This document shows positions 20,642-56,600 of a DNA stretch of 64,000 nt, in pieces; position 1 is the stretch's first letter; each line of letters starts with the position of its first letter. Origin of the DNA: Macrostomum hystrix (taxonomy: Eukaryota > Animalia > Platyhelminthes); NCBI GenBank assembly GCA_950097015.1, contig CATNEN010000003.1, positions 806,001 through 870,000 of the forward strand. The letters are read 5' to 3'. The notes under the pieces are model-generated. The model did no database searches. It worked only from the letters and a program-made list of their open reading frames with translations, and had not been told where the DNA came from. The position numbers and the translations under genes were made by a program.

Positions 20642-21019
20642 CCGTTCGTTAAAAAAATTAAACCTTTCTTTATTTAGTTCTAGTAATCTTCCACGAACCG
20701 CTCCGATCTCTCTAACTTTTTTGTGAAAATCTGAGTAGTATATGTACATAGCAGTTTAACGATCGTCATGACAAAACGTAGTGTTCTATCATAAGCCTAA
20801 CCTCATTATTCAGTTGATCATTTTGCGAAGATTGTATTCATTGTACGTCTCATTTACTATATATTTTGAGCTAATAACTCGTAAAAAAGGAGTGAATCTC
20901 AAATTTTAAAGCTTATCTTTGCGACCTCACGAAAATAAACTGTATTACAATGCATTGGGCAGTTGATTTCTATCATCTAAAATAATCTAAAATCATCAAT
21001 CTCTTTGTGCAAAGTACTA

Positions 21020-22519: not shown

Positions 22520-22971
22520 GATGATGAGTTGGACAAGTGATAGAGAAGTTGCTTTATATTTTTTCCCACGAAAATTTTGGAGCTTCTGGGAATGCCTTAA
22601 AGAGCAATATTTCGTTGAGTGCATACAGGTAAAAAAAGACAAGTCCAGCGTTGACTAGGCAATGACAGACTATCAAAACAGCCAGCACCTTATAGTCTCG
22701 CCGACGCCAAGTAAAAAAAGCTATTTCGGCTAACCGAAGTCTCGGCGGCAGACTTCAAAGTAGATTTGAAGAAAAGCTCTGCTTTTGTGCGACAAAGAAA
22801 TGGGACTGAATTGGGGCATAAAAATTAAATGAGTCTTAGCAGATGAATTTCTATATTATAAAAGTCCTAATTTCTATTACGATATAATTAAGCATTAATT
22901 TTTTTTCATTCACTCAATGCTAGAGACAATTATGCGGATTCTTAAAATCTTCGGGCTTGAGCAAAGCAGTT

Positions 22972-32648: not shown

Positions 32649-35600
32649 ATGAACGAATGCTTCAAAAGCTTTGATGCCGTAGAATGTCACTCGAAGTGGC
32701 TTCCATCGCTGAATTGTGACAGCAGCAAGGTTTCCAAGATTATTGATGATCTTCGGTGGCAAGCGGACAACATACCTTGGCTGAGAGGACTGTGTCTATT
32801 AAGCATGGCTCACCTGCACACTTTACCTGGGCGCTGTGATTTAAATCAAGCCAACGATTTGCTAAAGTCCATTACTGAGACACAACAATCAGAACATGAT
32901 GATCAACCGCAACTGGACATCGAGTTTTTAATCAAGGCGACGGAGCTCCGGCTTGCCATGTTACACTCATTTCCTGGACTTCCAAACAATTACACACTGC
33001 AGCTCAAACACCTGTCAGATCTGTGGAAAGACGAATTCAATCGAGCAACCGTTTGGGCTGTGAAAGGCTGGACAATGCACTGGTTCGCCATCGAGCCAAA
33101 TCGAGAAGCAGTTTTCAAAGAGTGCGAGGCGGCCTTGAACGAAGCGCGACGCATCTTTGACGAATGTCCAGAAGAGGACAGACCGAAAGCGGCAGACTTT
33201 CTGTGTCGATACGAACTGGCCTTTACATTATTTCGTCAAAGGAACGACACTTATCGAATCTGTAGTCAAGAACTGGAGCTGTGGGAAGCTGCAAGGAGCA
33301 TTTTGACACGCAACAATTGGAAACAGCCTCTTTTCTCTGCTAAATTCGCATTGGCAATCGCTTATGCTGCAGACAATCTTGAATTATTTGAGGAGCTAAT
33401 AAAGGAAGCAAAAGATGGCTTCAGTTATATCCTAGAGTATCCGAAAGTACCCGAAGTATCCGAAAAGCACAGGGATTTGGTCGTTAGTTTGGTGAGAGCA
33501 CTCTTGCAGCATCAAAAAGTTCGTGGAAACAGTGATGACAAAAGAGCTATAGAGAACTATCTGGATGAAGCTAGTCGTCTGGAGAGGTGCAAAAAGCACC
33601 CTAATTTCATTCTCCAAAAAATCTATTTCATTCTACAAACGGAAAATAAAAGTGCTGCAAAAGATTATATGCTCAAAATGAGAACCGAGGTGCCCGCCTT
33701 GAAGGAAGAATTCTGGTTCGAGTTGCGCCTAATCGGTCTAGAGAAGCCTGACAACCCCGAGCAGTTGTCAGAAGAAATGCGGAACTCATTTTTGGCCCGA
33801 TTCGAATCTCTCTGCTCGAATTTTCCTTCTAGGGCTCCACGTTCAAGATTTGAGAAAGGCAGCTTTCTGATCTGGGCTGGCTTGATTGACGATGGAATGA
33901 GGTGCCTCACGTGGGCCATGAACGACTACCTTCACCCGCTGCCGACAGTTTTCAGTGACGACAAAGTAAAAAAGCTAATTAACAGTAGAACAGAAGAACA
34001 GCTGGAGCGAATTAACGCTGAAATGTATTCCATCTGGCTAGAGAGTCAGTTCAAGACTGATGCTTCGACTTTTCACGTGAAAGACTCAATCGAAAAGTTC
34101 GAGAAACTTCTTAAACAAAATGCTCTATCCGATGAGCAGAGCAACTTTATCAACGAGCACCTCGGTCGGCTGATGATGCGAAAGTCGAGATTCGAAGAGG
34201 CTGAGCAGCTGTTTCACTCACTGCCTGAGTCAGTGCACCACAGAACTGCAATGATCGCTGACTCTCTGCTGTGCCAGGCGGAGAGCTTGTCGAGCGGAGA
34301 TCCCGTCAGCGAGGTGTGCAAGGAAAAGCTAGTCAGGATGCAAGCGGATCCCGTGAAATCAGTGTTCACAAGCAGCATCGGAATGCGGCTGCACCTGCTG
34401 AACGAGTGCGCGTCACTCGGCTGCAAGGACTCCGTACATGAAGCACTGCTGCTGCTGAAGGACATTCGAAATCAGAGCAACAGAGCCCACGTGTCGAAGG
34501 CGGACCACTTGTTCCTGCACAGCACATGCGTCTATGAATTCTGCGCCCGTTTGCTTCGACTTAAAGAGAATGGCTTTTATGTCGAACGGCGTCACACATC
34601 GGTCGCGTGTAGAAACGAGCAAGTGGCCGAGATGCTCCAGAAAGTTGAAAAAATGCTGTGCACGGACCTCTATCCAAGGAATTATCGACTAAGCATGGCG
34701 GAACAGTCTCTTCGCTATCTGTCTGTCCAGGAACAAATAACCCATTCACCATCGAACATTTGGCACACTCTGGAAGAGTCTCGCAAAGTGCTTGACGCTG
34801 TCTGGAATGAGCTGGTGTCCGATGCCCTGAAGGAATCGACTGAAAAGCGTATTCCTATCTATAAAAAGGCGCCAAAATACTATCCCTTTGCATACACATA
34901 CTCGTATTTATCTAGCTCTTCTGATGATATGCAGCTCACAATAAACGATATAGAGCAAGCCGTGCGAAAGAACTGGACTGGAACAGAAATAGTGATCGAC
35001 AGCTTAGTAAAAGAAATAAGTGAAGCCTCTATCAAGCTACTTGCAGGGTCGGATTCAATTGTAAAATCATCTTCAGAAACCGAAAGCAAAATGGAAGAAT
35101 GCTGCAAATACTTTTCCGAAATGTTGCAATTGATCGGAAGTCGGAAGTCGGAAGAGACCGATACAGTTAAAAAAAGTGTCATTGACCTACAGGAAATCTT
35201 CAAAACATTTAATATAAGGTATCGCTTCTTGACGTTCATTTCGATGTTGAATCAGAATATTCCACCAGGACCTAATGCAGACAGAAATCACAATAACAAA
35301 TTCGTCGACTATGGTACACTGAGAGATTTGACTTTGAAGGTGAAGAGGTGCAAGGATACCTTTGTGGGGATGTTCACCGCACCATTCCCAGTCGCATTTC
35401 GACCTGATGAGAGCGCTTGCAGGTGGATGATCGAACGGGAAGAGATCATGCTGAAGCATCAAGGCAGTTGGCACAAGATTTGGTGCGCAGCAATCAACCG
35501 CGATAAGCACAATGCACAAAAAAGCTTAGACGACATTAATAAAATAATCAAAGACAATTTTAAAGATAAGGGCCCAGCTCACTTGGTACAGATGGCACAT

Positions 35601-38600
35601 TTTGCTGCCGAGTTTGCGGAGGAAGCAAGACTGGTGCTACGAAATTATACAGTGAGGATTATAGTCTTTTTTGGAAAAAAATCAATGCATTTTAATCAAA
35701 TCTAATGCATTTATTTGAAAATACGAGCAGCGTTTAAAGTAAATGACTAGCAAGTAATCAATAACTGCAACCAAACTTCACATAGCCAACCAATTCTTTT
35801 CAGTACCCTCCAGTGGACGTAGCAACCAAATCCGATATCCTAAAATCGAATTACGAATGGCGCCTGGCTTGCTATGAGTGCTGCACTTTTACGGATCCCC
35901 TGCTCAGCACATCCAGTGTAAAGGAAGACGCGTGTGCAAACTGCGAGCAGTGGATTCTCCTTGTCCGAAAAAAGAACCAGCGGGCAGCTGAACTAGCTGG
36001 CACGTGGAAGCGGGTCAGACCCAGATCAAGGAAGCTAGTTAAGCTGAGGATGTGCAATAAGTACAGCGACATAATGAGCTACAACGGATGCCGACGCTCG
36101 GATTGTCCGTTCGCCCACGGAGAAGTGGAGTACTGGCTCTGGGAGCAGGAACGTATAGGAAAGTTCTCATACAACAGGTTTCTGAGGGAGAACCGCCCAG
36201 CTGGGTCACAACTGCCGCTGATTCTCCGCGAGCTCCCGAGAAAACCGAGTCGCATTGTGTACGCGGGTACAAAGCAACTGCCCGCTAGGCTGCAGCCTGA
36301 CGGGTCACGAGAGTCAGCACCCAGGCTGTGTGAAAGCCTTTTTGATGGGAAAAAATGCAGACACTCGACCAATTGTAGCAATGCTCATTGTGCGGAAGAG
36401 GAGCAGTTGTGGAAAATAATGCAGCAGCCTAAAGGTAAATTCCATAGTTAAGCTTTTCAATGGCATAATTCCTATTTCCGCCATTCTCCCTATCCTACAA
36501 ACATCCCAAACCATATCCACTTCCTATCCTACACCCACCCCAAACTATACCCTCTCCCTATCCTACACCCATCCCAAACCATACCCTCTCCATATCCTAC
36601 ACCCATCCCAAACTATACCCTCTCCCCATCCTACCCCATCCTACACCCATCCTACACCCATCCCAAAGCATACCCTCTCCCTATCCTACCCCATCCCAAA
36701 CGATGCCCTCTCCCTATCCTACACCCATCCCAAAGCATACCCTCTCCGTATCCTACCCCATTCCAAAGCATACCCTCTCCCTATCCTACCCCATCCCAAA
36801 CGATGGGGTACAAAGGTTTTGCTTGGATTTATTAGAGGCTTGTTTCTGCTTGGGCTGGATCCCAATCCCAGTTTCGCTGGTGATCCGCAGCAAGCACGTT
36901 AGTCTTTTTACTGTATTTAGTTTCTCTTAGCAATAAAGCCTGGCACTCATCTCAGAGGGCACTATAGCTCGGTGGCAACTGTGATCCGAATAGTTGTGAG
37001 CTCGAATAGTTGGATTCTGGAGATGGAAGGTTTCATGTCTTTGTCAAGCAATATGTTTGCTAAAATGACTCGCGAAGCAACTGGTGGTTCCATCAGATCA
37101 GGCTGAGCTGTACAGTTGGCTTACATCAAACAACATCACTACTACAAATTCCAGAGGACTGGCCAGCTGGACTAAGAGACCTAATCGACAACATCGAGCC
37201 TGAACTAGTTGGCTGGAGCCTGGAGTCTCACTGTGACTGGAAACTGGCCTGCTACAAGTGCGCCAAGTCTATTGATGCCCTGCAGAGCAAGTTCTCAATT
37301 AATGAGTCCCTTAATATATGTGAGCAATGTGAGCAGTGCTTCCTACTGGTCAGACCGAAGGGTAACGCAGTCAGCAACGAGTGGCGGCGAGTCCGCCTCA
37401 AAGTGCGGAAAGTGATTAGGTGCCAGAATTATGACTCGGGAAAATGCCGTTGCTCCGACTGCGACAGGGCCCACGGTGACTTGGAGCTGAAAATCTGGAA
37501 ACTGGAGAGGCTCCAGAAGTTCTCGATTGAACAGTTTCTAGAAGACAACCGCACAGCTGCGTCACAACTGCCGCTGATTCTCCGCGAGGTCCCAGGAAGC
37601 AGCGGACAACTGAGTCGCATTGTGTACGCGGGTCCACAGCAACGGCCCGCTAGGCTGCAGCCTGACGGGTCACGAGTAAGAGAGTCACCCAGGCTGTGTG
37701 AAAGCCTTTTTGATGGGAAAAAATGCAGACACTCGAGCAATTGTTGCAATGCTCATTGTGCGGAAGAGGAGCAGTTGTGGAAAATAATGCAGCAGTCCAA
37801 AGGTAAATTTCTGCGTTAAGCTTTTCTATGTCATAACTCCTATTTTTCTTTATATTATCTCCCTATCCTACACCCATCCCAAAGCATAGCCTCTCCCTAT
37901 CCTACACCAATCCAAAACCATACCCTCTCCCTATCCTACACCAATCCCAAACCATACCCTCTCCCTATCCTACACCCATCCCAAACCATACCCTCTCCCT
38001 ATCCTTCACCCATCCCACCATACCCTCTCCCTATCCTTCACCCATCCCACCATACCCTCTCCCTATCCTTCACCCATCCCACCATACCCTCTCCCTATCC
38101 TTCACCCATCGCACCATACCCTCTCCCTATCCTTCACCCATCCCACCATACCCTCTCCCTATCCTTCACCCACCCCACCATACCCTCTCCCTATCCTTCA
38201 CCCATCCCAAACCATACCCTCTCCCTATCCTACACCCATCCCACCATACCCTCTCCCTATCCTACACCCATCCCAAACCATACCCTCTCCCTATCCTACA
38301 CCCATCCCACCATACCCTCTCCCTATCCTTCAACCATCCCAAACCATACCCTCTCCCTATCCTACACCCATCCCAAACCATACCCTCTCCCTATCCTACA
38401 CCCATCCCAAAGCATACCCTCTCCCTATCCTACACCCATCCCAAACCATACCCTCTCCCTATCCTACCCCATCCCAAAGCATACCCTCTCCCTATCCTAC
38501 CCCATCCCAAACGATGCCCTCTCTCTATCCTACACCCATCCCAAACCATTCCCTCTCCCTATCCTACACCCATCCCAAACCATACCCTCTCCCTATCCTA

Positions 38601-41443
38601 CACCCATCCCAAACCATACCCTCTCCCTATCCTACACCCAGCCCAAACGATGCCCTCTCCCTATCCTACACCCATCCCAAACCATACCCTCTCCCTATCC
38701 TACACCCAGCCCAAACGATGCCCTCTCCCTATCCTACACCCATCCCAAAGCATACCCTCTCCCTATCCTACACCCATCCCAAACCATACCCTCTCCCTAT
38801 CCTACACCCATCCCAAACCATACCCTCTCCCTATCCTACACCCATTCCAAAACATACCCTCTCCCTATCCTACACCCATCCCAAACCATACCCTCTCCCT
38901 ATCCTACACCCATCCCAAACCATACCCTCTCCCTATCCTACACCCATCCCAAACCATACCCTCTCCCTATCCTACACCCAGCCCAAACCATACCCTCTCC
39001 CTATCCTACACCCATCCCAAACCATACCCTCTCCCTATCCTACACCCATCCCAAAGCATACCCTCTCCCTATCCTACCCCATCCCAAACGATGGGGTACA
39101 AAGGTTTTGCTTGGATTTATTAGAGGCTTGTTTCTGCTTGGGCTGGATCCCAATCCCAGTTTCGCTGGTGATCCGCAGCAAGCACGTTAGTCTTTTTACT
39201 GTATTTAGTTTCAATTAGCAATAAAGCCTGGCACTCATCTCAGACCATCCGAAAAAGTGAGCCATTAGTCTCAGCTGATCAGATCACCCAGCTTGCACTA
39301 TAGCTCGGTGGCAACTGTGATCCGCTTGGAGCACGAATAGTTGGATTCTGGAGATGGAAGGTTTCATGTCTTTGTCAAGCAATATGTTTGCTAAAATGAC
39401 TCGCGAAGCAACTGGTGGTTCCATCAGATCAGGCTGAGCTGTACAGTTGGCTTACATCAAACATCATCACTACTACAAATTCCAGAGGACTGGCCAGCTG
39501 GACTAAGAGACCTAATCGACAACATCGAGCCTGAACTAGTTGGCTGGAGCCTGGAGTCTCACTGTGACTGGAAACTGGCCTGCTACAAGTGCGCCAAGTC
39601 TATTGATGCCCTGCAGAGCAAGTTCTCAATTAATGAGTCCCTTAATATATGTGAGCAATGTGAGCAGTGCTTCCTACTGGTCAGACCGAAGGGTAACGCA
39701 GTCAGCAACGAGTGGCGGCGAGTCCGCCTCAAAGTGCGGAAAGTGATTAGGTGCCAGAATTATGACTCGGGAAAATGCCGTTGCTCCGACTGCGACAGGG
39801 CCCACGGTGACTTGGAGCTGAAAATCTGGAAACTGGAGAGGCTCCAGAAGTTCTCGATTGAACAGTTTCTAGAAGACAACCGCACAGCTGGGTCACAACT
39901 GCCGCTGATTCTCCGCGAGCTCCCAGGAAGCAGAGGACAACCGAGTCGCATTGTGTACGCGGGTCCACAGCAACGGCCCGCCAGAATTCAGCCCGAGGTC
40001 CAAATGGGAAACGATTCCAGGGCCAAGCTTTGTAAATTTGTTTTAGATAATAAGCAATGTCGCAATTGGGACACTTGCACATTTGCGCATTGTGCCGAAG
40101 AGGAGCAATTGTGGAATGTCATGAAGAATCCCAAAGGTAAATCGTGATCTACATCAATGAGTTGTGGTATAAGTAGTCTTCTCCACAGAACTCGCATCAG
40201 ATCTGCTGGCCCACCCAGCACATTAGCATGACGCCCGTTTCCCAAACCCCAACCCAATGCCTAGCACATTTTATTTTCCAAACTCCTGGCCAAAGAATCT
40301 GCAAACTCTTATCAAATAGATGCTGCCCGAGAGACCGAATAGTGGAAGCTCTTTCAGGCGCTTCCCAAAGCATACCCTCTCCCTATCCTACCCCATCCCA
40401 AACCATACCCTCTCCCTATCCTACACCCATCCCAAACCATACCCTCTCCCTATCCTACCCCATCCCAAACCATACCCTCTCCCTATCCTACACACATCCC
40501 AAACCATACCCTCTCCCTATCCTACACCCATTCCAAACCATACCCTCTCCCCATTCTACACACATCCCAAACCATACCCTCTCCCTATCCTACACCCATC
40601 CCAAACCATACCCTCTCCCCATTCTACACACATCCCAAACCATACCCTCTCCCTATCCTACACCCATCCCAAACCTTACCCTCTCCCTATCCTACACCCA
40701 TCCCAAACCATACCCTCTCCCTATCCTACACCCATCCCAAACCATACCCTCTCCCTATCCTACACCCATCCCAAACCATACCCTCTCCCTATCCTTCACC
40801 CATCCCAAACCATACCCTCTCCCTATCATTCACCCATCCCAAACCATACCCTCTCCCTATTCTACACACATCCCAAACCATACCCTCTCCCTATCCTTCA
40901 CCCATCCCAAACCATACCCTCTCCCCATTCTACACACATCCTAAACCATACCCTCTCCCTATCCTACACCCATCCCAAACCATACCCTCTCCCCATTCTA
41001 CACACATCCCAAACCATACCCTCTCCCTATCCTACACCCATCCAAACCTTACCCTCTCCCTATCCTACACCCATCCCAAACCATACCCTCTCCCTATCCT
41101 ACACCCATCCCAAACCATACCCTCTCCCTATCCTACACCCATCCCAAAGCATACCCTCTCCCCATTCCTATCCTACAGTCCTACAGGCATTGATCGCGTG
41201 TTTGAAACCCACAATCGACTTTGTCTGGCGCAAGCAGACTAAATTACAAAGCATTTATTTTATGTTCCAGACACCTGGCCGATTGCTCTGCGATCTTTTA
41301 TCGAAAAGATACCAGCACAAAATATCTTTGCGTTTGGCGGAAGCTCTGCCAGCCAATCAGGCGACCGCAGGAGTCTGGTACAGCAGAAGTCAAAAAAAGC
41401 CAAGAACCTGTTTGAGGTACTGCCTTGCGATGTGCAAGACTAA
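32649..41443 (+). CDS. IFIT-like TPR / HEPN-like / CCCH zinc-finger multidomain protein, copy A; exons 32649-35651, 35804-36434, 37155-37802, 39486-40136, 41271-41443 (~1701 aa)
   Basis: A 3-kb open first exon; GT-AG junctions join in frame (5106 nt). The N-terminus FDAVECHSKW...SEHDDQ...AVKGWTMHWF resembles the IFIT N-terminus (LxxLxCHFTW...EEHDNQ...EEGWALL). LEESRKVLDAVWNELV, YYPF and NRDKH suggest a HEPN-like domain. Three homologous exons each carry CxxC-CxxC, WxRVR and two CCCH fingers followed by AHxxxExxxW. The gene structure is solid; domain names are motif-based inference. An upstream exon is possible (acceptor cag at 32635-32637). Confidence 0.85.
36484..36803. repeat. 34-bp C-rich satellite (ccctctccctatcctacacccatcccaaaccata)n, intron 2 of copy A
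   Basis: Direct periodicity. Confidence 0.9.
37857..39092. repeat. 34-bp C-rich satellite, intron 3 of copy A
   Basis: Direct periodicity; explains the (PSPYPTPIPNHTLSLSY)n ORFs. Confidence 0.95.
40363..41176. repeat. 34-bp C-rich satellite, intron 4 of copy A
   Basis: Direct periodicity. Confidence 0.95.
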
Positions 41444-41829: not shown

Positions 41830-42324
41830 TTACTAGCCTTGACTGTGAACTCAGAGAGGTATCAAGGGCAATATATAACCAAGGTTACTAGCCTGGACTG
41901 TGAACTCAGAGAGGTATCAAGGGCAATATATAACCAAGGTTACTAGCCTGGACTGTGAACTCAGAGAGGTATCAAGGGCAATATATAACCAAGGTTACTA
42001 GCCTTGACTGTGAACTCAGAGAGGTATCAAGGGCATTATATAACCAAGTTTACTAGCCTGGACTGTGAACTCAGAGAGGTATCAAGGGCAATATATAACC
42101 AAGGTTACTAGCCTGGACTGTGAACTCAGAGAGGTATCAAGGGCAATATATAACCAAGGTTACTAGCCTGGACTGTGAACTCAGAGAGGTATCAAGGGCA
42201 ATATATAACCAAGGTTACTAGCCTGGACTGTGAACTCAGAGAGGTATCAAGGGCAATATATAACCAAGGTTACTAGCCTGGACTGTGAACTCAGAGAGGT
42301 ATCAAGGGCAATATATAACCAAGG
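41830..42324. repeat. 55-bp tandem repeat x9 (ttactagcctggactgtgaactcagagaggtatcaagggcaatatataaccaagg)
   Basis: Nine near-identical contiguous units with no spacers. Confidence 0.95.
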
Positions 42325-44693: not shown

Positions 44694-47600
44694 TTAGTGA
44701 TCTAGCACATCGCGAGGCAGTACCTCAAACAGGTTCTTGGCTTTTTTTACTTCTGCGGTACCAAAGAATCGCCTGTACGGTTTTGTTTGCTTTGTTCCTA
44801 CAGCCCGCGCTGATTGGCTGGCAGAGCTTCCGCCAGAGGCAAGGCTATTTTGTGCTGGTATCTTTTCAACAAGAGATCGCAGAGCAATCGGCCAGGTGTC
44901 TGGAACATAAATGCTTTGTAATTTAGTCTGCTTGCGCCAGACAAAGTGGATTGTGGCTTTCAAACACGCGATCAATGCCAGAATGTTGCATAGGAATGGG
45001 GTATGGTGTGGCATGGACTGTAGGATAGGGAGAGGGTATGCTTTGGGATGGGTGTAGGATGGGGATGGGGCATGGTGTGGTATGGACTATAGGAAAGGAA
45101 TGGGGCATGGTGTGGTATGGACTATAGGAAAGGAATGGGGCATGGTGTGGGATGGACTGTAGGATGGGAATGGGGCATGTGGGATGGACTGTAGGATGGG
45201 ATCACCAGCGAAACTGGGATTGGGATCCAGCCCAAGCAAAACAAGCCTCTAATAAATCCAAGCAAAACCTTTGTGTCTGTTGGAGATCTTGCTCTATCAG
45301 CCTTAAGTAATTATCCGTGCAATGAGGCTGGGCATCGTTTGGGATGGGTGTAGGATAGGGAGAGGGTATGGTTTGGGATGGGTGTAGGATAGGGAGAGGG
45401 TATGGTTTGGGATGGGTGTAGGATAGGGAGAGGGTATGGTTTGGGATGGGGTAGGATAGGGAGAGGATATGGTTTGGGATGGGGTAGGATAGGGAGAGGG
45501 TATGGTTTGGGATGGGGTAGGATAGGGAGAGGGTATGGTTTGGGATGGGGTAGGATAGGGAGAGGGTATGGTTTGGGATGGGTGTAGGATAGGGAGAGGG
45601 TATGGTTTGGGATGGGTGTAGGATAGGGAGAGGGCATCGTTTAGGATGGGTGTAGGATAGGGACAGGGCATCGTTTAGGATGGGTGTAGGATAGGGAGAG
45701 GGCATCGTTTAGGATGGGTGTAGGATAGGGAGAGGGCATCGTTTGGGATGGGTGTAGGATAGGGAGAGGGCATCGCTTAGGATGGGTGTAGGATAGGGAG
45801 AGGGCATCGTTTAGGATGGGTGTAGGATAGGGAGAGGGCATCGTTTAGGATGGGTGTAGGATAGGGAGAGGGCATCGTTTAGGATGGGTGTAGGATAGGG
45901 AGAGGGCATCGTTTAGGATGGGTGTAGGATAGGGAGAGGGCATCGTTTAGGATGGGTGTAGGATAGGGAGAGGGCATCGTTTAGGATGGGTGTAGGATAG
46001 GGAGAGGGCATCGTTTGGGATGGGTGTAGGATAGGGAGAGGGCATCGCTTAGGATGGGTGTAGGATAGGGAGAGGGCATCGTTTGGGATGGGTGTAGGAT
46101 AGGGAGAGGGCATCGCTTAGGATGGGTGTATGATAGGGAGAGCTCTATCCTACTTTCTTAGTCCAGCTGGCCAGTCCTCTGGAATTTGTAGTAGTGATGT
46201 TGTTTGATGTAAGCCAACTGTACAGCTCAGCCTGATCTGATGGAACCACCAGTTGCTTCGCGAGTCATTTTGGCAAACATATTGCTTGACAAAGACATGA
46301 AACCTTCCATCTCCAGAATCCAACTATTCGTGCTCCAAGCGGATAACAGTTGCCACCGAGCTATAGTGCAAGCTGGGTGATCTGATCAGCTGAGACTCAT
46401 GGTTCACTTTTTCGGTTGATCTGAGAAGAGTGCCAGGCTTTATTGCTGAGAGAAACTAAATACAGTAAAAGACTAACGTGCTTGCTGTGGATCCCCAGCG
46501 AAACTGGGATTGGGATCCAGCCCAAGCAGAAACAAGCCTCTAATAAATCCAAGCAAAACCTTTGTTTCTGTTGGAGATCTTGCTCTATCAGCCTTAGTAA
46601 TTATCCGTGCAATGACGCTGGGCATCGTTTGGGATGGGTGTAGGATAGGGAGAGGGTATGGTTTGGGATGGGTGTAGGATAGGGAGAGGGTATGGTTTGG
46701 GATGGGTGTAGGATAGGGAGAGGGTATGGTTTGGGATGGGGTAGGATAGGGAGAGGGTATGGTTTGGGATGGGTGTAGGATAGGGAGAGGGTATGGTTTG
46801 GGATGGGTGTAGGATAGGGAGAGGGTATGGTTTGGGATGGGTGTAGGATAGGGAGAGGGTATGGTTTGGGATGGGTGTAGGATAGGGAGAGGGTATGGTT
46901 TGGGATGGGGTAGGATAGGGAGAGGGTATGGTTTGGGATGGGTGTAGGATAGGGAGAGGGTATGGTTTGGGATGGGTGTAGGATAGGGAGAGGGTATGGT
47001 TTGGGATGGGGTAGGATAGGGAGAGGGTATGGTTTGGGATGGGTGTAGGATAGGGAGAGGGTATGGTTTGGGATGGGTGTAGGATAGGGAGAGGGTATGG
47101 TTTGGGATGGGTGTAGGATAGGGAGAGGGTATGGTTTGGGATGGGTGTAGGATAGGGAGAGGGTATGGTTTGGGATGGGTGTAGGATAGGGAGAGGGTAT
47201 GGTTTGGGATGGGTGTAGGATAGGGAGAGGGTATGGTTTGGGATGGGGTAGGATAGGGAGAGGGTATGGTTTGGGATGGGGTAGGATAGGGAGAGGGTAT
47301 GGTTTGGGATTGGGTAGGATAGGGAGAGGGTATGGTTTGGGATGGGGTAGGATAGGGAGAGGGTATGGTTTGGGATGGGTGTAGGATAGGGAGAGGGTAT
47401 GGTTTGGGATGGGGTAGGATAGGGAGAGGGTATGGTTTAAGATGGGGTAGGATAGGGAGAGGGTATGGTTTGGGATGGGGTAGGATAGGGAGAGGGTATG
47501 GTTTGGGATGGGGTTGGATAGGGAGAGGGTATGGTTTGGGATGGGGTAGGATAGGGAGAGGGTATGGTTTGGGATGGGGTTGGATAGGGAGAGGGTATGG

Positions 47601-50600
47601 TTTGGGATGGGTGTAGGATAGGGAGAGGGTATGGTTTGGGATGGGGTAGGATAGGGAGAGGGTATGGTTTGGGATGGGTGTAGGATAGGGAGAGGGTATG
47701 GTTTGGGATGGGGTAGGATAGGGAGAGGGTATGGTTTGGGATGGGTGTAGGATAGGGAGAGGGTACGGTGGGATGGGTGTAGGATAGGGAGAGGGTATGG
47801 TTTGGGATGGGGTAGGATAGGGAGAGGGTATGGTTTGGGATGGGGTAGGATAGGGAGAGGGTATGGTTTGGGATGGGGTAGGATAGGGAGAGGGTATGGT
47901 TTGGGATGGGGTAGGATAGGGAGAGGGTATGGTTTGGGATGGGGTAGGATAGGGAGAGGGTATGGTTTGGGACGGGGTAGGATAGGGAGAGGGTATGGTT
48001 TGGGATGGGTGTAGGATAGGGAGAGGGTATGGTTTGGGATGGGGTAGGATAGGGAGAGGGTATGGTTTGGGATGGGTGTAGGATAGGGAGAGGGTATGGT
48101 TTGGGATGGGGTAGGATAGGGAGAGGGTATGGTTTGGGATGGGTGTAGGATAGGGAGAGGCTATGGTTTGGGATGGGGTAGGATAGGGAGAGGCTATGGT
48201 TTGGGATGGGGTAGGATAGGGAGAGGCTATGGTTTGGGATGGGGTAGGATAGGGAGAGGGTATGGTTTGGGATGGGTGTAGGATAGGGAGAGGGTACGGT
48301 GGGATGGGTGTAGGATAGGGAGAGGGTATGGTTTGGGATGGGTATAGGATAGGGAGAGGGTATGGTTTGGAATGGGTGTAGGATAGGGAGAGGGTATGGT
48401 TTGGGATGGGGTAGGATAGGGAGAGGGTATGGTTTGGGATGGGTGTAGGATAGGGAGAGGGTATGGTTTGGGATGGGGTAGGATAGGGAGAGGGTATGGT
48501 TTGGGATGGGTGTAGGATAGGGAGAGGGTATGGTTTGGGATGTGTGTAGAATGGGGAGAGGGTATGGTTTGGGATGGGTGTAGGATAGGGAGAGGGTATG
48601 GTGGGATGGGTGTAGGATAGGGAAAGGGTATGGTTTGGGATGGGTGTAGAATGGGGAGAGGGTATGGTTTGGAATGGGTGAAGGATGGGAAGAGGGTTTG
48701 CCTTGGGATCGGTGTAGGATAGGGAGAGGGTATGGTTTGGGATGGGTGTAGGATAGGGAGAGGCTATGGTTTGGGATGGGTGTAGGATAGGAAGAGGGTA
48801 TGGTTTGGGATGTGTGTAGAATGGGGAGAGGGTATGGTTTGGAATGGGTGAAGGATGGGGAGAGGGTTTGCCTTGGGATGGGTGTAGGATAGGGAGACGG
48901 TATGGTTTGGGATGGGTGTAGGATAGGGAGAGGGAATGGTTTGGGATGGGTAGGATAGGGAGAGGCTATGGTTTGGGATGGGTGTAGGATAGGGAGAGGG
49001 TATGGTTTGGGATGGGTGTAGGATAGGGAGAGGGAATGGTTTGGGATGGGGTAGGATAGGGAGAGGGTATGGTTTGGGATGGGTGTAGGATAGGGAGAGG
49101 CTATGGTTTGGGATGGGGTAGGATAGGGAGAGGCTATGGTTTGGGATGGGGTAGGATAGGGAGAGGCTATGGTTTGGGATGGGTGTAGGATAGGGAGAGG
49201 GTATGGTTTGGGATGGGGTAGGATAGGGAGAGGGTATGGTTTGGGATGGGGTAGGATAGGGAGAGGCTATAGTTTGGGATGCGTGTAGGATAGGGAGAGG
49301 GAATGGTTTGGGATGGGTGTAGGATAGGGAGAGGCTATGGTTTGGGATGGGGTAGGATAGGGAGAGGCTATGGTTTGGGATGGGTGTAGGATAGGAAGAG
49401 GGTATGGTTTGGGATGTGTGTAGAATGGGGAGAGGGTATGGTTTGGAATGGGTAAAGGATGGGCAGAGGGTTTGCCTTGGGATGGGTGTAGGATAGGGAG
49501 AGGCTATGGTTTGGGATGGGTGTAGGATAGGGAGAGGGTATGGTTTGGGATGGGTGTAGGATAGGGAGAGGGAATGGTTTGGGATGGGGTAGGATAGGGA
49601 GAGGGTATGGTTTGGGATGGGTGTAGGATAGGGAGAGGGAATGGTTTGGGATGGGGTAGGATAGGGAGAGGGTATGGTTTGGGATGGGTGTAGGATAGGG
49701 AGAGGCTATGGTTTGGGATGGGGTAGGATAGGGAGAGGCTATGGTTTGGGATGGGGTAGGATAGGGAGAGGCTATGGTTTGGGATGGGTGTAGGATAGGG
49801 AGAGGGTATGGTTTGGGATGGGGTAGGATAGGGAGAGGCTATAGTTTGGGATGCGTGTAGGATAGGGAGAGGGAATGGTTTGGGATGGGTGTAGGATAGG
49901 GAGAGGGTATGGTTTGGGATGGGGTAGGATAGGGAGAGGCTATGGTTTGGGATGGGTGTAGGATAGGGAGAGGGTATGGTTTGGGATGGGTGTAGGATAG
50001 GGAGAGGGAATGGTTTGGGATGGGGTAGGATAGGGAGAGGGTATGGTTTGGGATGGGTGTAGGATAGGGAGAGGCTATGGTTTGGGATGGGTGTAGGATA
50101 GGGAGAGGCTATGGTTTGGGATGGGGTAGGATAGGGAGAGGCTATGGTTTGGGATGGGTGTAGGATAGGGAGAGGCTATGGTTTGGGATGCGTGTAGGAT
50201 AGGGAGAGGGAATGGTTTGGGATGGGGTAGGATAGGGAGAGGCTATGGTTTCGGATGGGTGTAGGATAGGGAGAGGGTTTGGGATGGGTGTAGGATAGGG
50301 AGAGGGAATGGTTTGGGATGGGTGTAGGATAGGGAGAGGCTATGGTTTGGGATGGGTGTAGGATAGGGAGAGGCTATGGTTTGGGATGGGTGTAGGATAG
50401 GGAGAGGCTATGGTTTGGGATGCGTGTAGGATAGGGAGAGGGAATGGTTTGGGATGGGGTAGGATAGGGAGAGGCTATGGTTTGGGATGGGTGTAGGATA
50501 GGGAGAGGGTATGGTGGGATGGGTGTAGGATAGGGAGAGGGTATGGTGGGATGGGTGTAGGATAGGGAAAGGGTTTGGTTTGGGATGGGTGTAGGATAGG

Positions 50601-53600
50601 GAGAGGGTATGGTTTGGGATGGGTGTAGGATAGGGAGAGGGTATGGTTTGGGATGTGTGTAGAATGGGGAGAGGGTATGGTTTGGGATGGGTGTAGGATA
50701 GGGAGAGGGTATGGTGGGATGGGTGTAGGATAGGGAAAGGGTATGGTTTGGGATGGGTGTAGAATGGGGAGAGGGTATGGTTTGGAATGGTCGAAGGATG
50801 GGAAGAGGGTTTGCCTTGGGATCGGTGTAGGATAGGGAGAGGGTATGGTTTGGGATGGGTGTAGGATAGGGAGAGGCTATGGTTTGGGATGGGTGTAGGA
50901 TAGGAAGAGGGTATGGTTTGGGATGTGTGTAGAATGGGGAGAGGGTATGGTTTGGAATGGGTGAAGGATGGGGAGAGGGTTTGCCTTGGGATGGGTGTAG
51001 GATAGGGAGACGGTATGGTTTGGGATGGGTGTAGGATAGGGAGAGGGAATGGTTTGGGATGGGTAGGATAGGGAGAGGCTATGGTTTGGGATGGGTGTAG
51101 GATAGGGAGAGGGTATGGTTTGGGATGGGTGTAGGATAGGGAGAGGGAATGGTTTGGGATGGGGTAGGATAGGGAGAGGGTATGGTTTGGGATGGGTGTA
51201 GGATAGGGAGAGGCTATGGTTTGGGATGGGGTAGGATAGGGAGAGGCTATGGTTTGGGATGGGGTAGGATAGGGAGAGGCTATGGTTTGGGATGGGTGTA
51301 GGATAGGGAGAGGGTATGGTTTGGGATGGGGTAGGATAGGGAGAGGGTATGGTTTGGGATGGGGTAGGATAGGGAGAGGCTATGGTTTGGGATGGGGTAG
51401 GATAGGGAGAGGCTATGGTTTGGGATGGGGTAGGATAGGGAGAGGCTATGGTTTGGGATGGGGTAGGATAGGGAGAGGGTACGGTTTGGGATGGGGTAGG
51501 ATAGGGAGAGGCTATGGTTTGGGATGGGTGTAGGATAGGAAGAGGGTATGGTTTGGGATGTGTGTAGAATGGGGAGAGGGTATGGTTTGGAATGGGTGAA
51601 GGATGGGGAGAGGGTTTGCCTTGGGATGGGTGTAGGATAGGGAGAGGCTATGGTTTGGGATGGGTGTAGGATAGGGAGAGGGTATGGTTTGGGATGGGTG
51701 TAGGATAGGGAGAGGGAATGGTTTGGGATGGGGTAGGATAGGGAGAGGGTATGGTTTGGGATGGGTGTAGGATAGGGAGAGGGAATGGTTTGGGATGGGG
51801 TAGGATAGGGAGAGGGTATGGTTTGGGATGGGTGTAGGATAGGGAGAGGCTATGGTTTGGGATGGGGTAGGATAGGGAGAGGCTATGGTTTGGGATGGGG
51901 TAGGATAGGGAGAGGCTATGGTTTGGGATGGGTGTAGGATAGGGAGAGGGTATGGTTTGGGATGGGGTAGGATAGGGAGAGGCTATAGTTTGGGATGCGT
52001 GTAGGATAGGGAGAGGGAATGGTTTGGGATGGGTGTAGGATAGGGAGAGGGTATGGTTTGGGATGGGGTAGGATAGGGAGAGGCTATGGTTTGGGATGGG
52101 TGTAGGATAGGGAGAGGGTATGGTTTGGGATGGGTGTAGGATAGGGAGAGGGAATGGTTTGGGATGGGGTAGGATAGGGAGAGGGTATGGTTTGGGATGG
52201 GTGTAGGATAGGGAGAGGCTATGGTTTGGGATGGGTGTAGGATAGGGAGAGGCTATGGTTTGGGATGGGGTAGGATAGGGAGAGGCTATGGTTTGGGATG
52301 GGTGTAGGATAGGGAGAGGCTATGGTTTGGGATGCGTGTAGGATAGGGAGAGGGAATGGTTTGGGATGGGGTAGGATAGGGAGAGGCTATGGTTTCGGAT
52401 GGGTGTAGGATAGGGAGAGGGTTTGGGATGGGTGTAGGATAGGGAGAGGGAATGGTTTGGGATGGGTGTAGGATAGGGAGAGGCTATGGTTTGGGATGGG
52501 TGTAGGATAGGGAGAGGCTATGGTTTGGGATGGGTGTAGGATAGGGAGAGGCTATGGTTTGGGATGCGTGTAGGATAGGGAGAGGGAATGGTTTGGGATG
52601 GGGTAGGATAGGGAGAGGCTATGGTTTGGGATGGGTGTAGGATAGGGAGAGGGTATGGTGGGATGGGTGTAGGATAGGGAGAGGGTATGGTGGGATGGGT
52701 GTAGGATAGGGAAAGGGTTTGGTTTGGGATGGGTGTAGGATAGGGAGAGGGTATGGTTTGGGATGGGTGTAGGATAGGAAGAGGGTATGGTTTGGGATGT
52801 GTGTAGAATGGGGAGAGGGTATGGTTTGGAATGGGTGAAGGATGGGGAGAGGGTTTGCCTTGGGATGGGTGTAGGATAGGGAGACGGTATGGTTTGGGAT
52901 GGGTGTAGGATAGGGAGAGGGAATGGTTTGGGATGGGTAGGATAGGGAGAGGCTATGGTTTGGGATGGGTGTAGGATAGGGAGAGGGTATGGTTTGGGAT
53001 GGGTGTAGGATAGGGAGAGGGAATGGTTTGGGATGGGGTAGGATAGGGAGAGGGTATGGTTTGGGATGGGTGTAGGATAGGGAGAGGCTATGGTTTGGGA
53101 TGGGGTAGGATAGGGAGAGGCTATGGTTTGGGATGGGGTAGGATAGGGAGAGGCTATGGTTTGGGATGGGTGTAGGATAGGGAGAGGGTATGGTTTGGGA
53201 TGGGGTAGGATAGGGAGAGGGTATGGTTTGGGATGGGGTAGGATAGGGAGAGGCTATGGTTTGGGATGGGGTAGGATAGGGAGAGGCTATGGTTTGGGAT
53301 GGGGTAGGATAGGGAGAGGCTATGGTTTGGGATGGGGTAGGATAGGGAGAGGCTATGGTTTGGGATGGGGTAGGATAGGGAGAGGGTATGGTTTGGGATG
53401 GGGTAGGATAGGGAGAGGGAATGGTTTGGGATGGGTGTAGGATAGGGAGAGGGAATGGTTTGGGATGGGGTAGGATAGGGAGAGGGTATGGTTTGGGATG
53501 GGTGTAGGATAGGGAGAGGCTATGGTTTGGGATGGGGTAGGATAGGGAGAGGCTATGGTTTGGGATGGGGTAGGATAGGGAGAGGCTATGGTTTGGGATG

Positions 53601-56600
53601 GGGTAGGATAGGGAGAGGCTATGGTTTGGGATGGGTGTAGGATAGGAAGAGGGTATGATTTGGGATGTGTGTAGAATGGGGAGAGGGTATGGTTTGGAAT
53701 GGGTGAAGGATGGGGAGAGGGTTTGCCTTGGGATGGGTGTAGGATAGGGAGAGGCTATGGTTTGGGATGGGTGTAGGATAGGGAGAGGGTATGGTTTGGG
53801 ATGGGTGTAGGATAGGGAGAGGGAATGGTTTGGGATGGGGTAGGATAGGGAGAGGGTATGGTTTGGGATGGGTGTAGGATAGGGAGAGGGAATGGTTTGG
53901 GATGGGGTAGGATAGGGAGAGGGTATGGTTTGGGATGGGTGTAGGATAGGGAGAGGCTATGGTTTGGGATGGGGTAGGATAGGGAGAGGCTATGGTTTGG
54001 GATGGGGTAGGATAGGGAGAGGCTATGGTTTGGGATGGGTGTAGGATAGGGAGAGGGTATGGTTTGGGATGGGGTAGGATAGGGAGAGGCTATAGTTTGG
54101 GATGCGTGTAGGATAGGGAGAGGGAATGGTTTGGGATGGGTGTAGGATAGGGAGAGGGTATGGTTTGGGATGGGGTAGGATAGGGAGAGGCTATGGTTTG
54201 GGATGGGTGTAGGATAGGGAGAGGGTATGGTTTGGGATGGGTGTAGGATAGGGAGAGGGAATGGTTTGGGATGGGGTAGGATAGGGAGAGGGTATGGTTT
54301 GGGATGGGTGTAGGATAGGGAGAGGCTATGGTTTGGGATGGGTGTAGGATAGGGAGAGGCTATGGTTTGGGATGGGGTAGGATAGGGAGAGGCTATGGTT
54401 TGGGATGGGTGTAGGATAGGGAGAGGCTATGGTTTGGGATGCGTGTAGGATAGGGAGAGGGAATGGTTTGGGATGGGGTAGGATAGGGAGAGGCTATGGT
54501 TTCGGATGGGTGTAGGATAGGGAGAGGGTTTGGGATGGGTGTAGGATAGGGAGAGGGAATGGTTTGGGATGGGTGTAGGATAGGGAGAGGCTATGGTTTG
54601 GGATGGGTGTAGGATAGGGAGAGGCTATGGTTTGGGATGGGTGTAGGATAGGGAGAGGCTATGGTTTGGGATGCGTGTAGGATAGGGAGAGGGAATGGTT
54701 TGGGATGGGGTAGGATAGGGAGAGGCTATGGTTTGGGATGGGTGTAGGATAGGGAGAGGGTATGGTGGGATGGGTGTAGGATAGGGAGAGGGTATGGTGG
54801 GATGGGTGTAGGATAGGGAAAGGGTTTGGTTTGGGATGGGTGTAGGATATGGAGAGGGTATGGTTTGGGATGGGTGTAGGATAGGGAGAGGGTATGGTTT
54901 GGGATGGGTGTAGGATAGGGAGAGGGTATGGTGGGATGGGTGTAGGATAGGGAGAGGGTATGGTGGGATGGGTGTAGGATAGGGAAAGGGTTTGGTTTGG
55001 GATGGGTGTAGGATATGGAGAGGGTATGGTTTGGGATGGGTGTAGGATAGGGAGAGGGTATGGTTTGGGGTGGGTGTAGGATAGGAAGAGGATATGGTTT
55101 GGGATGTTTGTAGGATGCTAGGGAGAATGGCGGAAATAGGAATTATGCCATTGAAAAGCTTAACTATGGAATTTACCTTTAGGCTGCTGCATTATTTTCC
55201 ACAACTGCTCCTCTTCCGCACAATGAGCATTGTTACAATTGGTCGACTTTCTGCATTCTGTGCCATCAAAACAGCTTTCACACAGCCTGGGTCCTGACTC
55301 TCTTACTCGTGACCCGTCAGGCTGCAGCCTAGCGGGCAGTTGCTTTGTACCCGCGTACACAACGCGGACGCAACTCGTGTCGTGCTCACTTGCGGGCAGC
55401 TCGCGGCGGAGAATCAGCGGCAGTTCTGACACGGCTGTGCGGTTCTCCTTCAGAAACCTGTTATAGGAGAACTTTCCTATACGTTCCTGCTCCCAGAGCC
55501 AGTACTCCACTTCTCCGTGGGCGAACGGACAATCCGAGCGTCGGCATCCGTTGTAGCTCATTATGTCGCTGTACTTATTGCACATCCTCAGCTTAACTAG
55601 CTTCCTTGATCTGGGTCTGACCCGCTTCCACGTGCCAGCTAGTTCAGCTGCCCGCTGGTTCTTTTTTCGGACAAGGAGAATCCACTGCTCGCAGTTTGCA
55701 CACGCGTCTTCCTTTACACTGGATGTGCTGAGCAGGGGATCCGCAAAAGAGCAGCACTCATAGCAAGCCAGGCGCCATTCGTAATTCGGTTTTAGGACAT
55801 CGGATTTGGTTGCTACGTCCACTGGAGGGTACTGAAAAGAATTGGTTGGCTATGTGAAGTTTGGTTGCAGTTATTGATTACTTGCTAGTCATTTACTTTA
55901 AACGCTGCTCGTATTTTCAAATAACTGCATTAGATTTGATTAAAATGCATTGATTTTTTTCCAAAAAAGACTATAATCCTCACTGTATAATTTCGTAGCA
56001 CCAGTCTTGCTTCCTCCGCAAACTCGGCAGCAAAATGTGCCATCTGTACCAAGTGAGCTGGGCCCTTATCTTTAAAATTGTCTTTGATTCTTTTATTAAT
56101 GTCATCTAAACTTTTTTGTGCATTGTGCTTATCGCGGTTGATTACTGCGCACCAAATCTTGTGCCAACTGCCTTGATGCTTCAGCATGATCTCTTCCCGT
56201 TCGATCATCCACCTGCAAGCGCTCTCATCAGGTCGAAATGCGACTGGGAATGGTGCGGTGAACATCCCCACAAAGGTATCCTTGCACCTCTTCACCTTCA
56301 AAGTCAAATCTCTCAGTGTACCATAGTCGACGAATTTGTTGTTGTGATTACTGTCTGCATTAGGTCCTGGTGGAATATTCTGATTCAACATCGAAATGAA
56401 CGTCAAGAAGCGATACCTTATATTAAATGTTTTGAAGATTTCCTGTAAGTCAATGACACTTTTTTTAACTGTATCGGTCTCTTCCGACTTCCGACTTCCG
56501 ATCAATTGCAACATTTCGGAAAAGTATTTGCAGCATTCTTCCATTTCGCTTTTGGCTGCTGAAGATGGTTTTATAATTGAATCCGACCTAGCAAGTAATT

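What the first reader, a model, noticed from the sequence alone, without database searches (positions are those of the whole stretch)
32649..41443. Candidate RNA sensor-effector immune protein: IFIT-like TPR + HEPN-like domain + CCCH zinc-finger array in one gene
Seen: splicing joins the 1001-codon first exon to three zinc-finger exons and a short tail (~1701 aa). Residues ~1-200 follow the IFIT N-terminal pattern (FDAVECHSKW vs IFIT1 LEQLRCHFTW; SEHDDQ vs EEHDNQ; AVKGWTMHWF vs EEGWALLKC), and TPR-like helices follow (HLGRLMMRKSRFEEAEQLF). Then come a HEPN-like region and ZC3H7/HELZ2-type CCCH modules. Established: vertebrate IFITs bind 5'-triphosphate or cap-0 viral RNA and have no catalytic domain; HEPN domains are RNase effectors (RNase L KEN, Cas13, bacterial toxins); CCCH fingers bind RNA (ZAP, ZC3H7). 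Inference: a single-chain invertebrate antiviral sensor-nuclease, an architecture I do not recognise as described.
Basis: partly seen in the sequence, partly recalled or inferred. Interest (0 to 1): 0.92.

Follow-up and report, generated by a model that had tools for sequence, protein, structure and literature searches.

The report
Flatworm IFIT-like gene with zinc fingers
A flatworm gene that is really spliced and expressed joins a complete copy of the fold of vertebrate IFIT virus-RNA sensors to an unknown helical domain and three zinc-finger modules, which is notable because IFITs were reported only from jawed vertebrates; the proposed RNA-cutting (HEPN) domain is not supported.

Summary
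The gene is real. The 1001-codon exon 1 (32649-35651) is spliced to zinc-finger exons. Assembled contigs of four public runs skip 35652-35803 (GT..AG) exactly as predicted, and the exon 2 to exon 3 joint was seen in three runs. A Macrostomum lignano orthologue reads straight across the same junction.

The rest of exon 1 is helical, conserved only within Macrostomum, and has no recognisable relative. HEPN is not supported: there is no HMM hit, no fold hit, and no Arg 4-6 residues before the conserved His in any of 15 family members.

Each of the three later exons encodes a Cys4 unit plus two CCCH fingers. Paralogues carry RGG tails instead.

A 96.6% identical inverted copy with one zinc module lies at 58986-44694 and is also transcribed.

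Most likely this is an RNA-binding, possibly antiviral, protein with no evident nuclease. The architecture is new, its function is untested, and the sensor-nuclease reading is only half supported.

The parts
32649..34283 (+). Exon 1, codons 1-545: complete IFIT-fold TPR domain (N-terminal signature FDAVECHSKW)
34284..35651 (+). Exon 1, codons 546-1001: family-specific helical region. Includes a poorly conserved three-helix insert (about aa 777-870) and a conserved C-terminal block (aa 919-1001, nt 35403-35651) with R-x-E931, W941, W945, N950-x-D-K-H954 and A-H984-x-AAEFAEE
   Evidence: Alignments A1 and A3. AF2 models are all-helical. No Pfam, PADLOC or PDB relative.
35652..35803 (+). Intron 1 (152 nt, GT..AG, phase 0)
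   Evidence: Skipped in contigs of 4 of 4 runs. The M. lignano orthologue P0001 reads ..EEYT|YPEV.. across the same point.
35804..36434 (+). Exon 2: zinc module 1 (Cys4 unit, CCCH finger 1, linker SQLPLILRE, CCCH finger 2)
   Evidence: 53% identical to P0001 residues 1005-1221. All 12 zinc ligands are invariant in the four modules of the window. Weak zf-CCCH_2 hit. Covered by spliced contigs.
36435..37154 (+). Intron 2 (720 nt, GT..AG, phase 1), holding a short array of the 34-bp C-rich satellite (36485-36800)
   Evidence: Joint 36432>37153 (cut +2) in 3 runs. Satellite found by TRF.
37155..37802 (+). Exon 3: zinc module 2
   Evidence: Frame and splice sites. E3-specific contigs in all 4 runs.
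37803..39485 (+). Intron 3, filled by the 34-bp satellite (37858-39089, about 37 copies)
   Evidence: TRF. Donor GTAAAT and acceptor TTCCAG.
39486..40136 (+). Exon 4: zinc module 3. The first 405 nt are identical to exon 3 and the 3' third is divergent.
   Evidence: 78-nt contigs carrying the three E4-specific letters are present in all 4 runs. zf-CCCH_4/zf-CCCH weak hits.
40137..41270 (+). Intron 4 (predicted), filled by the 34-bp satellite (40363-41170)
   Evidence: TRF. Donor GTAAAT at 40137 and acceptor TGTTCCAG ending at 41270. No RNA was laid here.
41271..41443 (+). Tail exon (57 codons plus stop). It begins D-TWPIALRSFIEKI, like the starts of exons 3 and 4.
   Evidence: Phase-1 compatible reading. 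A homologous intact tail ORF is present in the second gene copy. Not verified by RNA.
55984..58986 (-). Second copy (B), exon 1: 1001 codons, 39 amino-acid differences from copy A, first codon TTG instead of ATG
   Evidence: One run's spliced contig carries all four copy-B-specific letters.
55177..55831 (-). Copy B, its single zinc-module exon
45330..55116 (.). About 9.8 kb of the same 34-bp satellite (about 290 copies) inside copy B's last intron
   Evidence: TRF. GC skew up to 0.94.
44694..44899 (-). Copy B, tail exon (intact ORF, 81.6% DNA identity to copy A's tail region)

Best explanation
The locus is an expressed five-exon gene of a macrostomid flatworm. The closest public proteins are from Macrostomum lignano, at 41-67% identity, so the species is related but different. 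The gene encodes about 1701 residues in four parts.

(1) Residues 1 to about 545 are a complete IFIT-type TPR clamp, homologous to vertebrate IFIT1/IFIT5.

(2) Residues about 546-1001 are a helical region known only from Macrostomum. It ends in a strongly conserved block (R-x-E..W..W..N-x-D-K-H..AH-x-AAEFAEE) of unknown activity.

(3) Three tandem zinc modules follow, one per exon. Each has a Cys4 unit and two CCCH fingers.

(4) A short tail ends the protein.

Inferred mechanism: the protein binds RNA with two kinds of surface. The IFIT-like clamp would thread a single-stranded RNA end, and the CCCH fingers would bind single-stranded RNA. The protein would then act by sequestering that RNA or recruiting partners, not by cutting it, because no nuclease domain is detectable.

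The same IFIT-plus-C-domain core occurs in paralogues with RGG-repeat tails, and short IFIT-only paralogues are followed by a degenerate zinc module. RNA binding is therefore the common theme.

A role in defence against foreign RNA is plausible. It rests on IFIT homology, family expansion, a recent inverted duplicate and a dN/dS of 0.58. It has not been shown.

Shown: gene structure, expression, IFIT homology and fold, zinc-ligand conservation, absence of HEPN features.

Inferred: RNA binding, mode of action, immune role.
For: Splicing and expression:
- The E1>E2 joint is present in 4 of 4 runs and the E2>E3 joint in 3 runs. E3- and E4-specific contigs are present in 4 of 4 runs.
- The orthologue P0001 is continuous across the E1/E2 junction.

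IFIT:
- The profile hit to IFIT5 has E = 2e-11 and begins at LLELECHFTW.
- Foldseek target-normalised TM is 0.47-0.53 for IFITs (one entry 0.41), against 0.07-0.27 for all but one of the other listed TPR proteins; OGT 1w3b_A reaches 0.43.
- ESM Atlas neighbours are IFIT-like/TTC22 clusters.
- The equivalent of IFIT5 R186, which PMC13197388 calls critical for RNA binding, is kept as R196 and is conserved in the family consensus.

Zinc modules:
- The 12 Cys/His ligands are invariant in 4 modules.
- ZC3H7A finger 2d9m is hit at E = 0.03.
- Sub-threshold zf-CCCH hits.

Modularity:
- RGG tails occur in P0003, P0007 and L005.
- A zinc module lies downstream of the short paralogues L006 and L007.

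No nuclease.
Against: - No binding or induction data exist.
- By the HMM alignment, the equivalents of IFIT5 K150 (W145 here) and of the E33/T37/Q41 triphosphate/metal site are not kept. The 5'-ppp pocket may therefore not be conserved.
- The second half of the pocket could not be mapped.
- The conserved C-terminal block was never folded alone. Fold searches mostly tested the variable three-helix insert, so an undetected catalytic fold is not excluded.
- TTC22 clusters score as high as IFIT clusters in the Atlas. No TTC22 structure was among the compared chains, so the nearest vertebrate relative could be TTC22 and not IFIT proper.
- The runs' kind is not on record as RNA. That they are transcriptomes is inferred from their size (43-48 Mb of contigs for a 220 Mb genome) and from their GT..AG skips.
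Confidence: 0.55

Rival explanations
1. One reading: a single-chain sensor-nuclease, in which the IFIT-like clamp and CCCH fingers select RNA and a HEPN-type RNase at the end of exon 1 cuts it.
Against: No member of the family has Arg 4-6 residues before the conserved His; that position is Ile/Val/Leu/Ala. There is no HEPN hit in Pfam or PADLOC for the window protein or for 15 family members. Foldseek and VIA gave no HEPN match above noise. The motif is followed by two more helices instead of opening the last one.
Confidence: 0.1
2. A non-immune post-transcriptional regulator. The TPR region would be a protein-protein scaffold and the CCCH fingers would bind the animal's own mRNAs (for example in the germline), as in ZC3H7/RoXaN-type TPR + CCCH proteins. 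The IFIT likeness would reflect shared ancestry of fold only.
For: The first CCCH finger is most like the ZC3H7A finger (E = 0.03). The gene is expressed in all four runs found, with no sign that these were challenged animals. Most mapped IFIT5 triphosphate-site residues are not kept. CCCH and RGG proteins are common housekeeping RNA regulators (general knowledge).
Against: No orthologue exists outside Macrostomum among 1.84 billion representatives, which is unusual for a housekeeping factor. The family is expanded, with at least 7 further matching loci in this genome (L003-L009, about 6 paralogous genes). The locus carries a young inverted duplicate with dN/dS 0.58 and variable module number, as fast-evolving defence genes do. 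The fold match covers the whole closed IFIT clamp, not generic TPR.
Confidence: 0.3
3. An artefact: a duplicated pseudogene, or an assembly error in satellite-rich DNA, with the 'zinc exons' being unrelated ORFs.
For: The window is full of satellites. Copy B has TTG in place of the start ATG. E3 and E4 are near-identical repeats.
Against: Both copies keep 1001 open codons. Spliced contigs with exact GT..AG joints come from four runs. The orthologue has the same domain order. All zinc ligands are kept.
Confidence: 0.02

Closest known systems
[quoted passage not shown]
   Different: - It comes from a flatworm, whereas IFITs were reported only from jawed vertebrates (PMC3688568).
- Identity is 11-14%.
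- It has insertions that stretch the domain to about 545 residues.
- The K150 and E33/T37/Q41 equivalents are not kept.
- About 1150 further residues (C-domain and zinc modules) are fused on; IFITs have no such additions.
- No interferon system is known in flatworms.
TTC22 (tetratricopeptide repeat protein 22)
   Same: ESM Atlas places TTC22 clusters at the same score (0.92) as IFIT clusters.
   Different: No sequence or structure comparison with TTC22 could be made here. TTC22 has no zinc fingers, according to the Pfam content of its clusters.
ZC3H7A/ZC3H7B (RoXaN): TPR plus CCCH zinc-finger proteins
   Same: The order is the same: TPR region, then CCCH fingers. The first finger of each module, with its following 'AHG-x-x-EL-x-x-W', resembles the ZC3H7A finger 2d9m (E = 0.03).
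   Different: The TPR part here is IFIT-like, not ZC3H7-like. No ZC3H7 protein was found by the exhaustive search with exon 1. The modules here carry an extra Cys4 unit and are exact tandem exon repeats.
ZAP (ZC3HAV1) and PARP12-type antiviral CCCH proteins
   Same: Arrays of CCCH fingers used to bind RNA in an antiviral protein that has no nuclease of its own and recruits cofactors. This is a functional analogy from general knowledge.
   Different: No sequence or fold similarity was detected or tested here. ZAP has no TPR/IFIT domain.
HEPN / KEN RNase domains (RNase L, Ire1, Cas13, Csm6)
   Same: A small all-helical region with a conserved Asn and His four residues apart.
   Different: The catalytic Arg is absent in all 15 members. 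There is no HMM or fold match.

Membership tests
IFIT | N-terminal signature L-x-x-L-x-C-H-F-T-W and sequence similarity of subdomain I | tested here: met
   Profile A2 against PDB: IFIT5 is the only natural strong hit, at E = 2e-11, with positions 19-199 = IFIT5 13-188. The window protein has the variant AVECHSKW; paralogues have ECHFTW.
IFIT | Whole closed TPR clamp fold (subdomains I-III with pivot), not a generic TPR superhelix | tested here: met
IFIT | Residues of the RNA 5'-end pocket (IFIT5 K150 and R186 critical; E33/T37/Q41; Y250/R253; PMC13197388) | tested here: inconclusive
   By the HMM alignment: R186 maps to R196 (kept, and conserved in the family). K150 maps to W145 (not kept). 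E33/T37/Q41 fall on K/V, I, L/R (not kept). The second half of the pocket lies in a weak alignment (E 0.88) and was not mapped.
IFIT | Binding of 5'-ppp or cap0 RNA; induction by interferon or virus | not testable with these tools
   Needs biochemistry and challenge experiments.
HEPN RNase | Conserved R-x(4-6)-H catalytic motif | tested here: not met
   In all 15 aligned family members, the residues 4-6 positions before the conserved His954 are hydrophobic or small, never Arg.
HEPN RNase | Match to a HEPN family model | tested here: not met
   No HEPN family up to E = 1 in Pfam for the window protein or for 15 members. No hit in PADLOC up to E = 10 for four members.
HEPN RNase | Four-helix HEPN fold | tested here: inconclusive
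CCCH (C3H1) zinc finger | C-x(7-11)-C-x(4-5)-C-x3-H ligands, conserved | tested here: met
   Two such sets per module, invariant in all four modules of the window. A third, Cys4 set (C-x2-C..C-x2-C) is also invariant. UniRef names the orthologues 'C3H1-type domain-containing'.
CCCH (C3H1) zinc finger | Score above Pfam gathering threshold | tested here: not met
   zf-CCCH_2 scores 18.4 bits against a threshold of 25.8. zf-CCCH_4 scores 17.1 against 24.6. zf-CCCH scores 14.5 against 20.5.
ZC3H7 / known housekeeping orthologue | Detectable orthology of the whole protein to a conserved animal gene | tested here: not met
   phmmer of exon 1 against 1.84 billion representatives gave 9 hits. The named ones are all M. 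lignano and the rest are unnamed ENA contigs.

The most novel reading that the evidence does not exclude
IFIT-type RNA-end sensors are older than vertebrates and than interferon. Macrostomid flatworms would keep a modular family in which one IFIT-clamp-plus-C-domain core is combined with interchangeable RNA-binding tails: Cys4+CCCH modules in variable number, or RGG repeats. This would form an interferon-independent antiviral RNA-surveillance system. Its conserved C-terminal block (E931, N950, K953, H954, H984) would be a new kind of effector or signalling domain.
Probability: 0.25. Interest if true: 0.85.

Novelty: new variant of a known kind. Interest (0 to 1): 0.72.

Why it matters
IFIT proteins are central vertebrate sensors of non-self RNA 5' ends. 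They were reported to have arisen with interferon in jawed vertebrates (PMC3688568). Full-text searches of the held library found no IFIT report from flatworms, and the one mollusc paper opened mentions only IFITM.

A flatworm protein with the IFIT signature and the whole IFIT fold has two possible meanings. Either the origin of the family goes back to early bilaterians, or this is a striking case of retention in one lineage. In both cases it provides an interferon-free setting in which to ask what the ancestral IFIT clamp did.

The fusion to zinc-finger or RGG tails predicts that RNA binding is the core function. Macrostomum is amenable to RNAi and transgenesis, so the prediction can be tested directly.

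The conserved C-terminal block is a domain with no recognisable relative, attached to an immune-type sensor.

Tried and rejected
- Pfam on exon 1 gave nothing meaningful. phmmer of exon 1 against PDB gave only noise.
- HEPN was tested by Pfam, PADLOC, Foldseek (PDB and viral), two VIA searches and motif inspection. All were negative or noise.
- The C-domain profile against PDB gave only consensus-TPR noise from the overhanging N-terminal columns.
- The ESM Atlas search on aa 885-1001 gave no hit above 0.86, so leads only.
- The search for homologous proteins with the N-terminal profile found nothing new. This query could not be made.
- A Pfam scan of paralogue ORFs, to look for other fused domains such as RRM, found only TPR hits. 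A 986-aa ORF on contig C2 with a weak zinc-module match has no Pfam domain.
- The 'goes back 648' joint was first read as E3>E4. On checking, the contig carries 4 non-E3 letters, two of them of E2 type. The exon order E3>E4 is therefore not proven by contigs.
- A back-splice (circular RNA) reading of that joint was considered and not pursued.
All searches were done exon by exon, by reference.


Full report
**Observation**

The window holds a 1018-codon ORF at 32649-35705 on the + strand. After codon 1001 the sequence reads ACA|GTGAGG. After a TTTTCAG acceptor, the frame resumes at 35804 as YPPVDVATKS...EWRLACYEC.

The only close public protein is Macrostomum lignano A0A1I8J5T1 (P0001, 1346 aa, 41% identity over 98% of exon 1). 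It reads ..AAEFAEEARLVLEEYT-YPEVT...EWSLVCYSC without interruption. The junction is therefore supported by an orthologue.

tblastn of P0001 on the window, together with inspection of splice sites, gives five exons:
- E1 32649-35651
- E2 35804-36434
- E3 37155-37802
- E4 39486-40136
- tail 41271-41443 (stop TAA)

All later introns are phase 1. The joined protein was never assembled or searched.

**RNA evidence**

One search found four runs of one study that hold the stretch. Their kind is not on record. Each consists of 43-48 Mb of contigs for a 220-Mb genome, and the contigs skip introns, so I take them to be transcriptomes.

Laid on 35300-37850, they show:
- All four runs have a contig that skips 35652-35803 (GT..AG).
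- Three runs have the joint 36434>37155 (GT..AG).

E4's first 405 nt are identical to E3's, but three diagnostic letters differ further on. 112-nt contigs with the E3 letters and 78-nt contigs with the E4 letters are both present in all four runs. Both exons are therefore transcribed.

A joint that 'goes back 648' (37802>37155) would be E3>E4. Its contig, however, has four non-E3 letters, two of them of E2 type. The exon order is thus likely but not proven. The E4-to-tail joint lay outside the laid stretch.

Each zinc exon is followed, just past its donor, by an in-frame stop (GKFHS*, GKFLR*, GKS*). Intron retention would therefore give isoforms with one, two or three modules.

**The N-terminal domain is an IFIT**

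Pfam sees nothing in exon 1. An exhaustive phmmer search of 1.84 billion representatives finds only nine relatives. The named ones are all M. lignano and the rest come from unnamed ENA assemblies. The window's own genome (220 Mb, 42 contigs) gives seven further matching loci.

A profile of the N-terminal halves (A2, 15 sequences) was searched against all PDB sequences. IFIT5 was far the best hit (E = 2e-11), aligning profile positions 19-199 with IFIT5 13-188 from LLELECHFTW onward. Everything else was consensus-TPR designs and LapB at E > 1e-5. The ESM Atlas neighbours of exon 1 are IFIT2/5/1-like and TTC22 clusters at 0.91-0.93.

Sequence and predicted fold thus agree that residues 1 to about 545 are a whole IFIT clamp with insertions.

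[quoted passage not shown] In the HMM alignment:
- R186 falls on R196, which is conserved in the family.
- K150 falls on W145.
- The E33/T37/Q41 positions are not kept.

Conservation of the 5'-ppp pocket is therefore unproven.

**The rest of exon 1 is not a recognisable HEPN**

In 15 members the terminal block reads R-x-E..(G/A)W..W....N-x-(D/E)-K-H ... AH-x-AAEFAEE. The defining HEPN motif is R-x(4-6)-H. Here no sequence has Arg at any of those positions.

Other tests were also negative:
- No HEPN family appears in Pfam for the window protein or for any of the 15 members.
- PADLOC gives nothing.
- The PDB profile search gives nothing.
- Foldseek on PDB and on viral models finds nothing below E = 0.04.

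One caveat applies. I therefore reject HEPN membership on the motif and HMM tests, and leave the fold open.

**Zinc modules**

E2, E3, E4 and the single zinc exon of the second gene copy align over about 210 residues. Twelve Cys/His ligands are invariant:
- a C-x2-C..C-x2-C unit followed by ILLVR..W-x-RVR
- a C-x(7-11)-C-x4-C-x3-H finger followed by G-x-x-E-x-x-x-W
- a conserved linker SQLPLILRE
- a C-x8-C-x5-C-x3-H finger followed by CAEEEQLW

Pfam zf-CCCH models hit below threshold. The ZC3H7A finger 2d9m is the only PDB hit (E = 0.03).

Within the genome, the module also follows the two short IFIT-only paralogues on C10 and C41. Other paralogues and M. lignano proteins end in RGG repeats instead. 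Earlier notes of this scan on the same genome report IFIT-like paralogues with an unidentified tail that also failed HEPN tests. They also report one paralogue said to carry RRMs. I treat these as leads. My Pfam scan of the paralogue ORFs I fetched found no RRM.

**Locus**

A second copy lies inverted at 58986-44694. It is 96.6% identical to copy A over 4.2 kb, from 18 nt before the start codon to the beginning of intron 2. Its features are:
- Exon 1 keeps 1001 open codons with 39 amino-acid changes and dN/dS 0.58.
- Its first codon is TTG.
- It has one zinc exon (55831-55177).
- It has a 9.8-kb intron of the same 34-bp satellite that fills introns 2-4 of copy A.
- It has an intact tail exon (44899-44694).

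One run's spliced contig carries all four copy-B-specific letters, so copy B is transcribed and spliced too.

**Interpretation**

The following are shown:
- an expressed, spliced gene
- an IFIT-homologous clamp
- a Macrostomum-specific conserved helical domain
- three zinc modules

The following is inferred. The protein binds RNA through the clamp and the fingers, and it acts without a nuclease of its own. It would do so by sequestration or recruitment, as IFITs and ZAP do (general knowledge). An antiviral role is plausible, given the lineage restriction, the family expansion, the young duplicate with variable module number and the moderately raised dN/dS. It is untested, and a role in endogenous RNA regulation is a serious rival.

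Relative to the literature in the held library, IFIT genes were reported only from jawed vertebrates (PMC3688568), and no flatworm IFIT report was found. I file the finding as a new variant of a known kind.

Noticed in passing
window 44694-58986 (- strand): An inverted, convergent second copy of the gene, 96.6% identical over 4.2 kb. Its start codon is TTG in place of ATG. It has only one zinc module and a 9.8-kb satellite intron. It is transcribed and spliced in at least one run. Homology with copy A begins only 18 nt upstream of the start codon, so the two copies do not share a promoter.
   Followed up: partly
window 36485-36800, 37858-39089, 40363-41170, 45330-55116: One 34-bp satellite (TCTCCCTATCCTACACCCATCCCAAACCATACCC, C-rich on the coding strand) fills the introns between zinc exons in both gene copies. 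Exon 3 plus its satellite and exon 4 plus its satellite form a 2331-bp tandem unit. Module number therefore probably changes by unequal exchange within the satellite.
   Followed up: partly
window 36435-36451, 37803-37819, 40137-40147: Each zinc exon is followed, just past its donor, by an in-frame stop (GKFHS*, GKFLR*, GKS*). Unspliced or early-polyadenylated transcripts would thus encode proteins with one, two or three modules.
   Followed up: no
L007:2926-3369 (G000 C10:588358-588801) and the matching place on C41: The two short IFIT-only paralogues (about 485 aa, lacking the C-domain) are followed within about 30 nt by an ORF with a degenerate Cys4 + CCCH module. The IFIT-plus-zinc-module pairing therefore occurs in a second gene type.
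   Followed up: partly
L010:3056-6016 and L010:8522-9340 (G000 C2:5677055-5683339): Two further places match the zinc module weakly. One lies inside a 986-aa ORF without any Pfam domain. The other lies in a 272-aa ORF with a sub-threshold zf-CCCH hit. Possibly another gene family uses the same module.
   Followed up: partly
P0003, P0007, L005:1489-4530: Paralogues of the IFIT-plus-C-domain core end in long RGG/RGRGG repeat tails instead of zinc modules. In P0007 (M. lignano) the tail is about 500 residues long.
   Followed up: no
window 10420-13115, 15328-19511, 20197-23890, 41830-42324, 63397-63999: The rest of the window is largely tandem repeats: units of 16, 20 (213 copies), 23, 40, 44, 55 and 31 bp. 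These account for the strong GC skew and for most other long ORFs, which are therefore not genes.
   Followed up: no
window 37645-37800 (contig record 10 of run X2): A contig joining an exon end to the E3/E4 start has four letters unlike E3, two of them of E2 type. This suggests an allele or gene conversion among the zinc exons in the sequenced animals, or a chimeric contig.
   Followed up: partly
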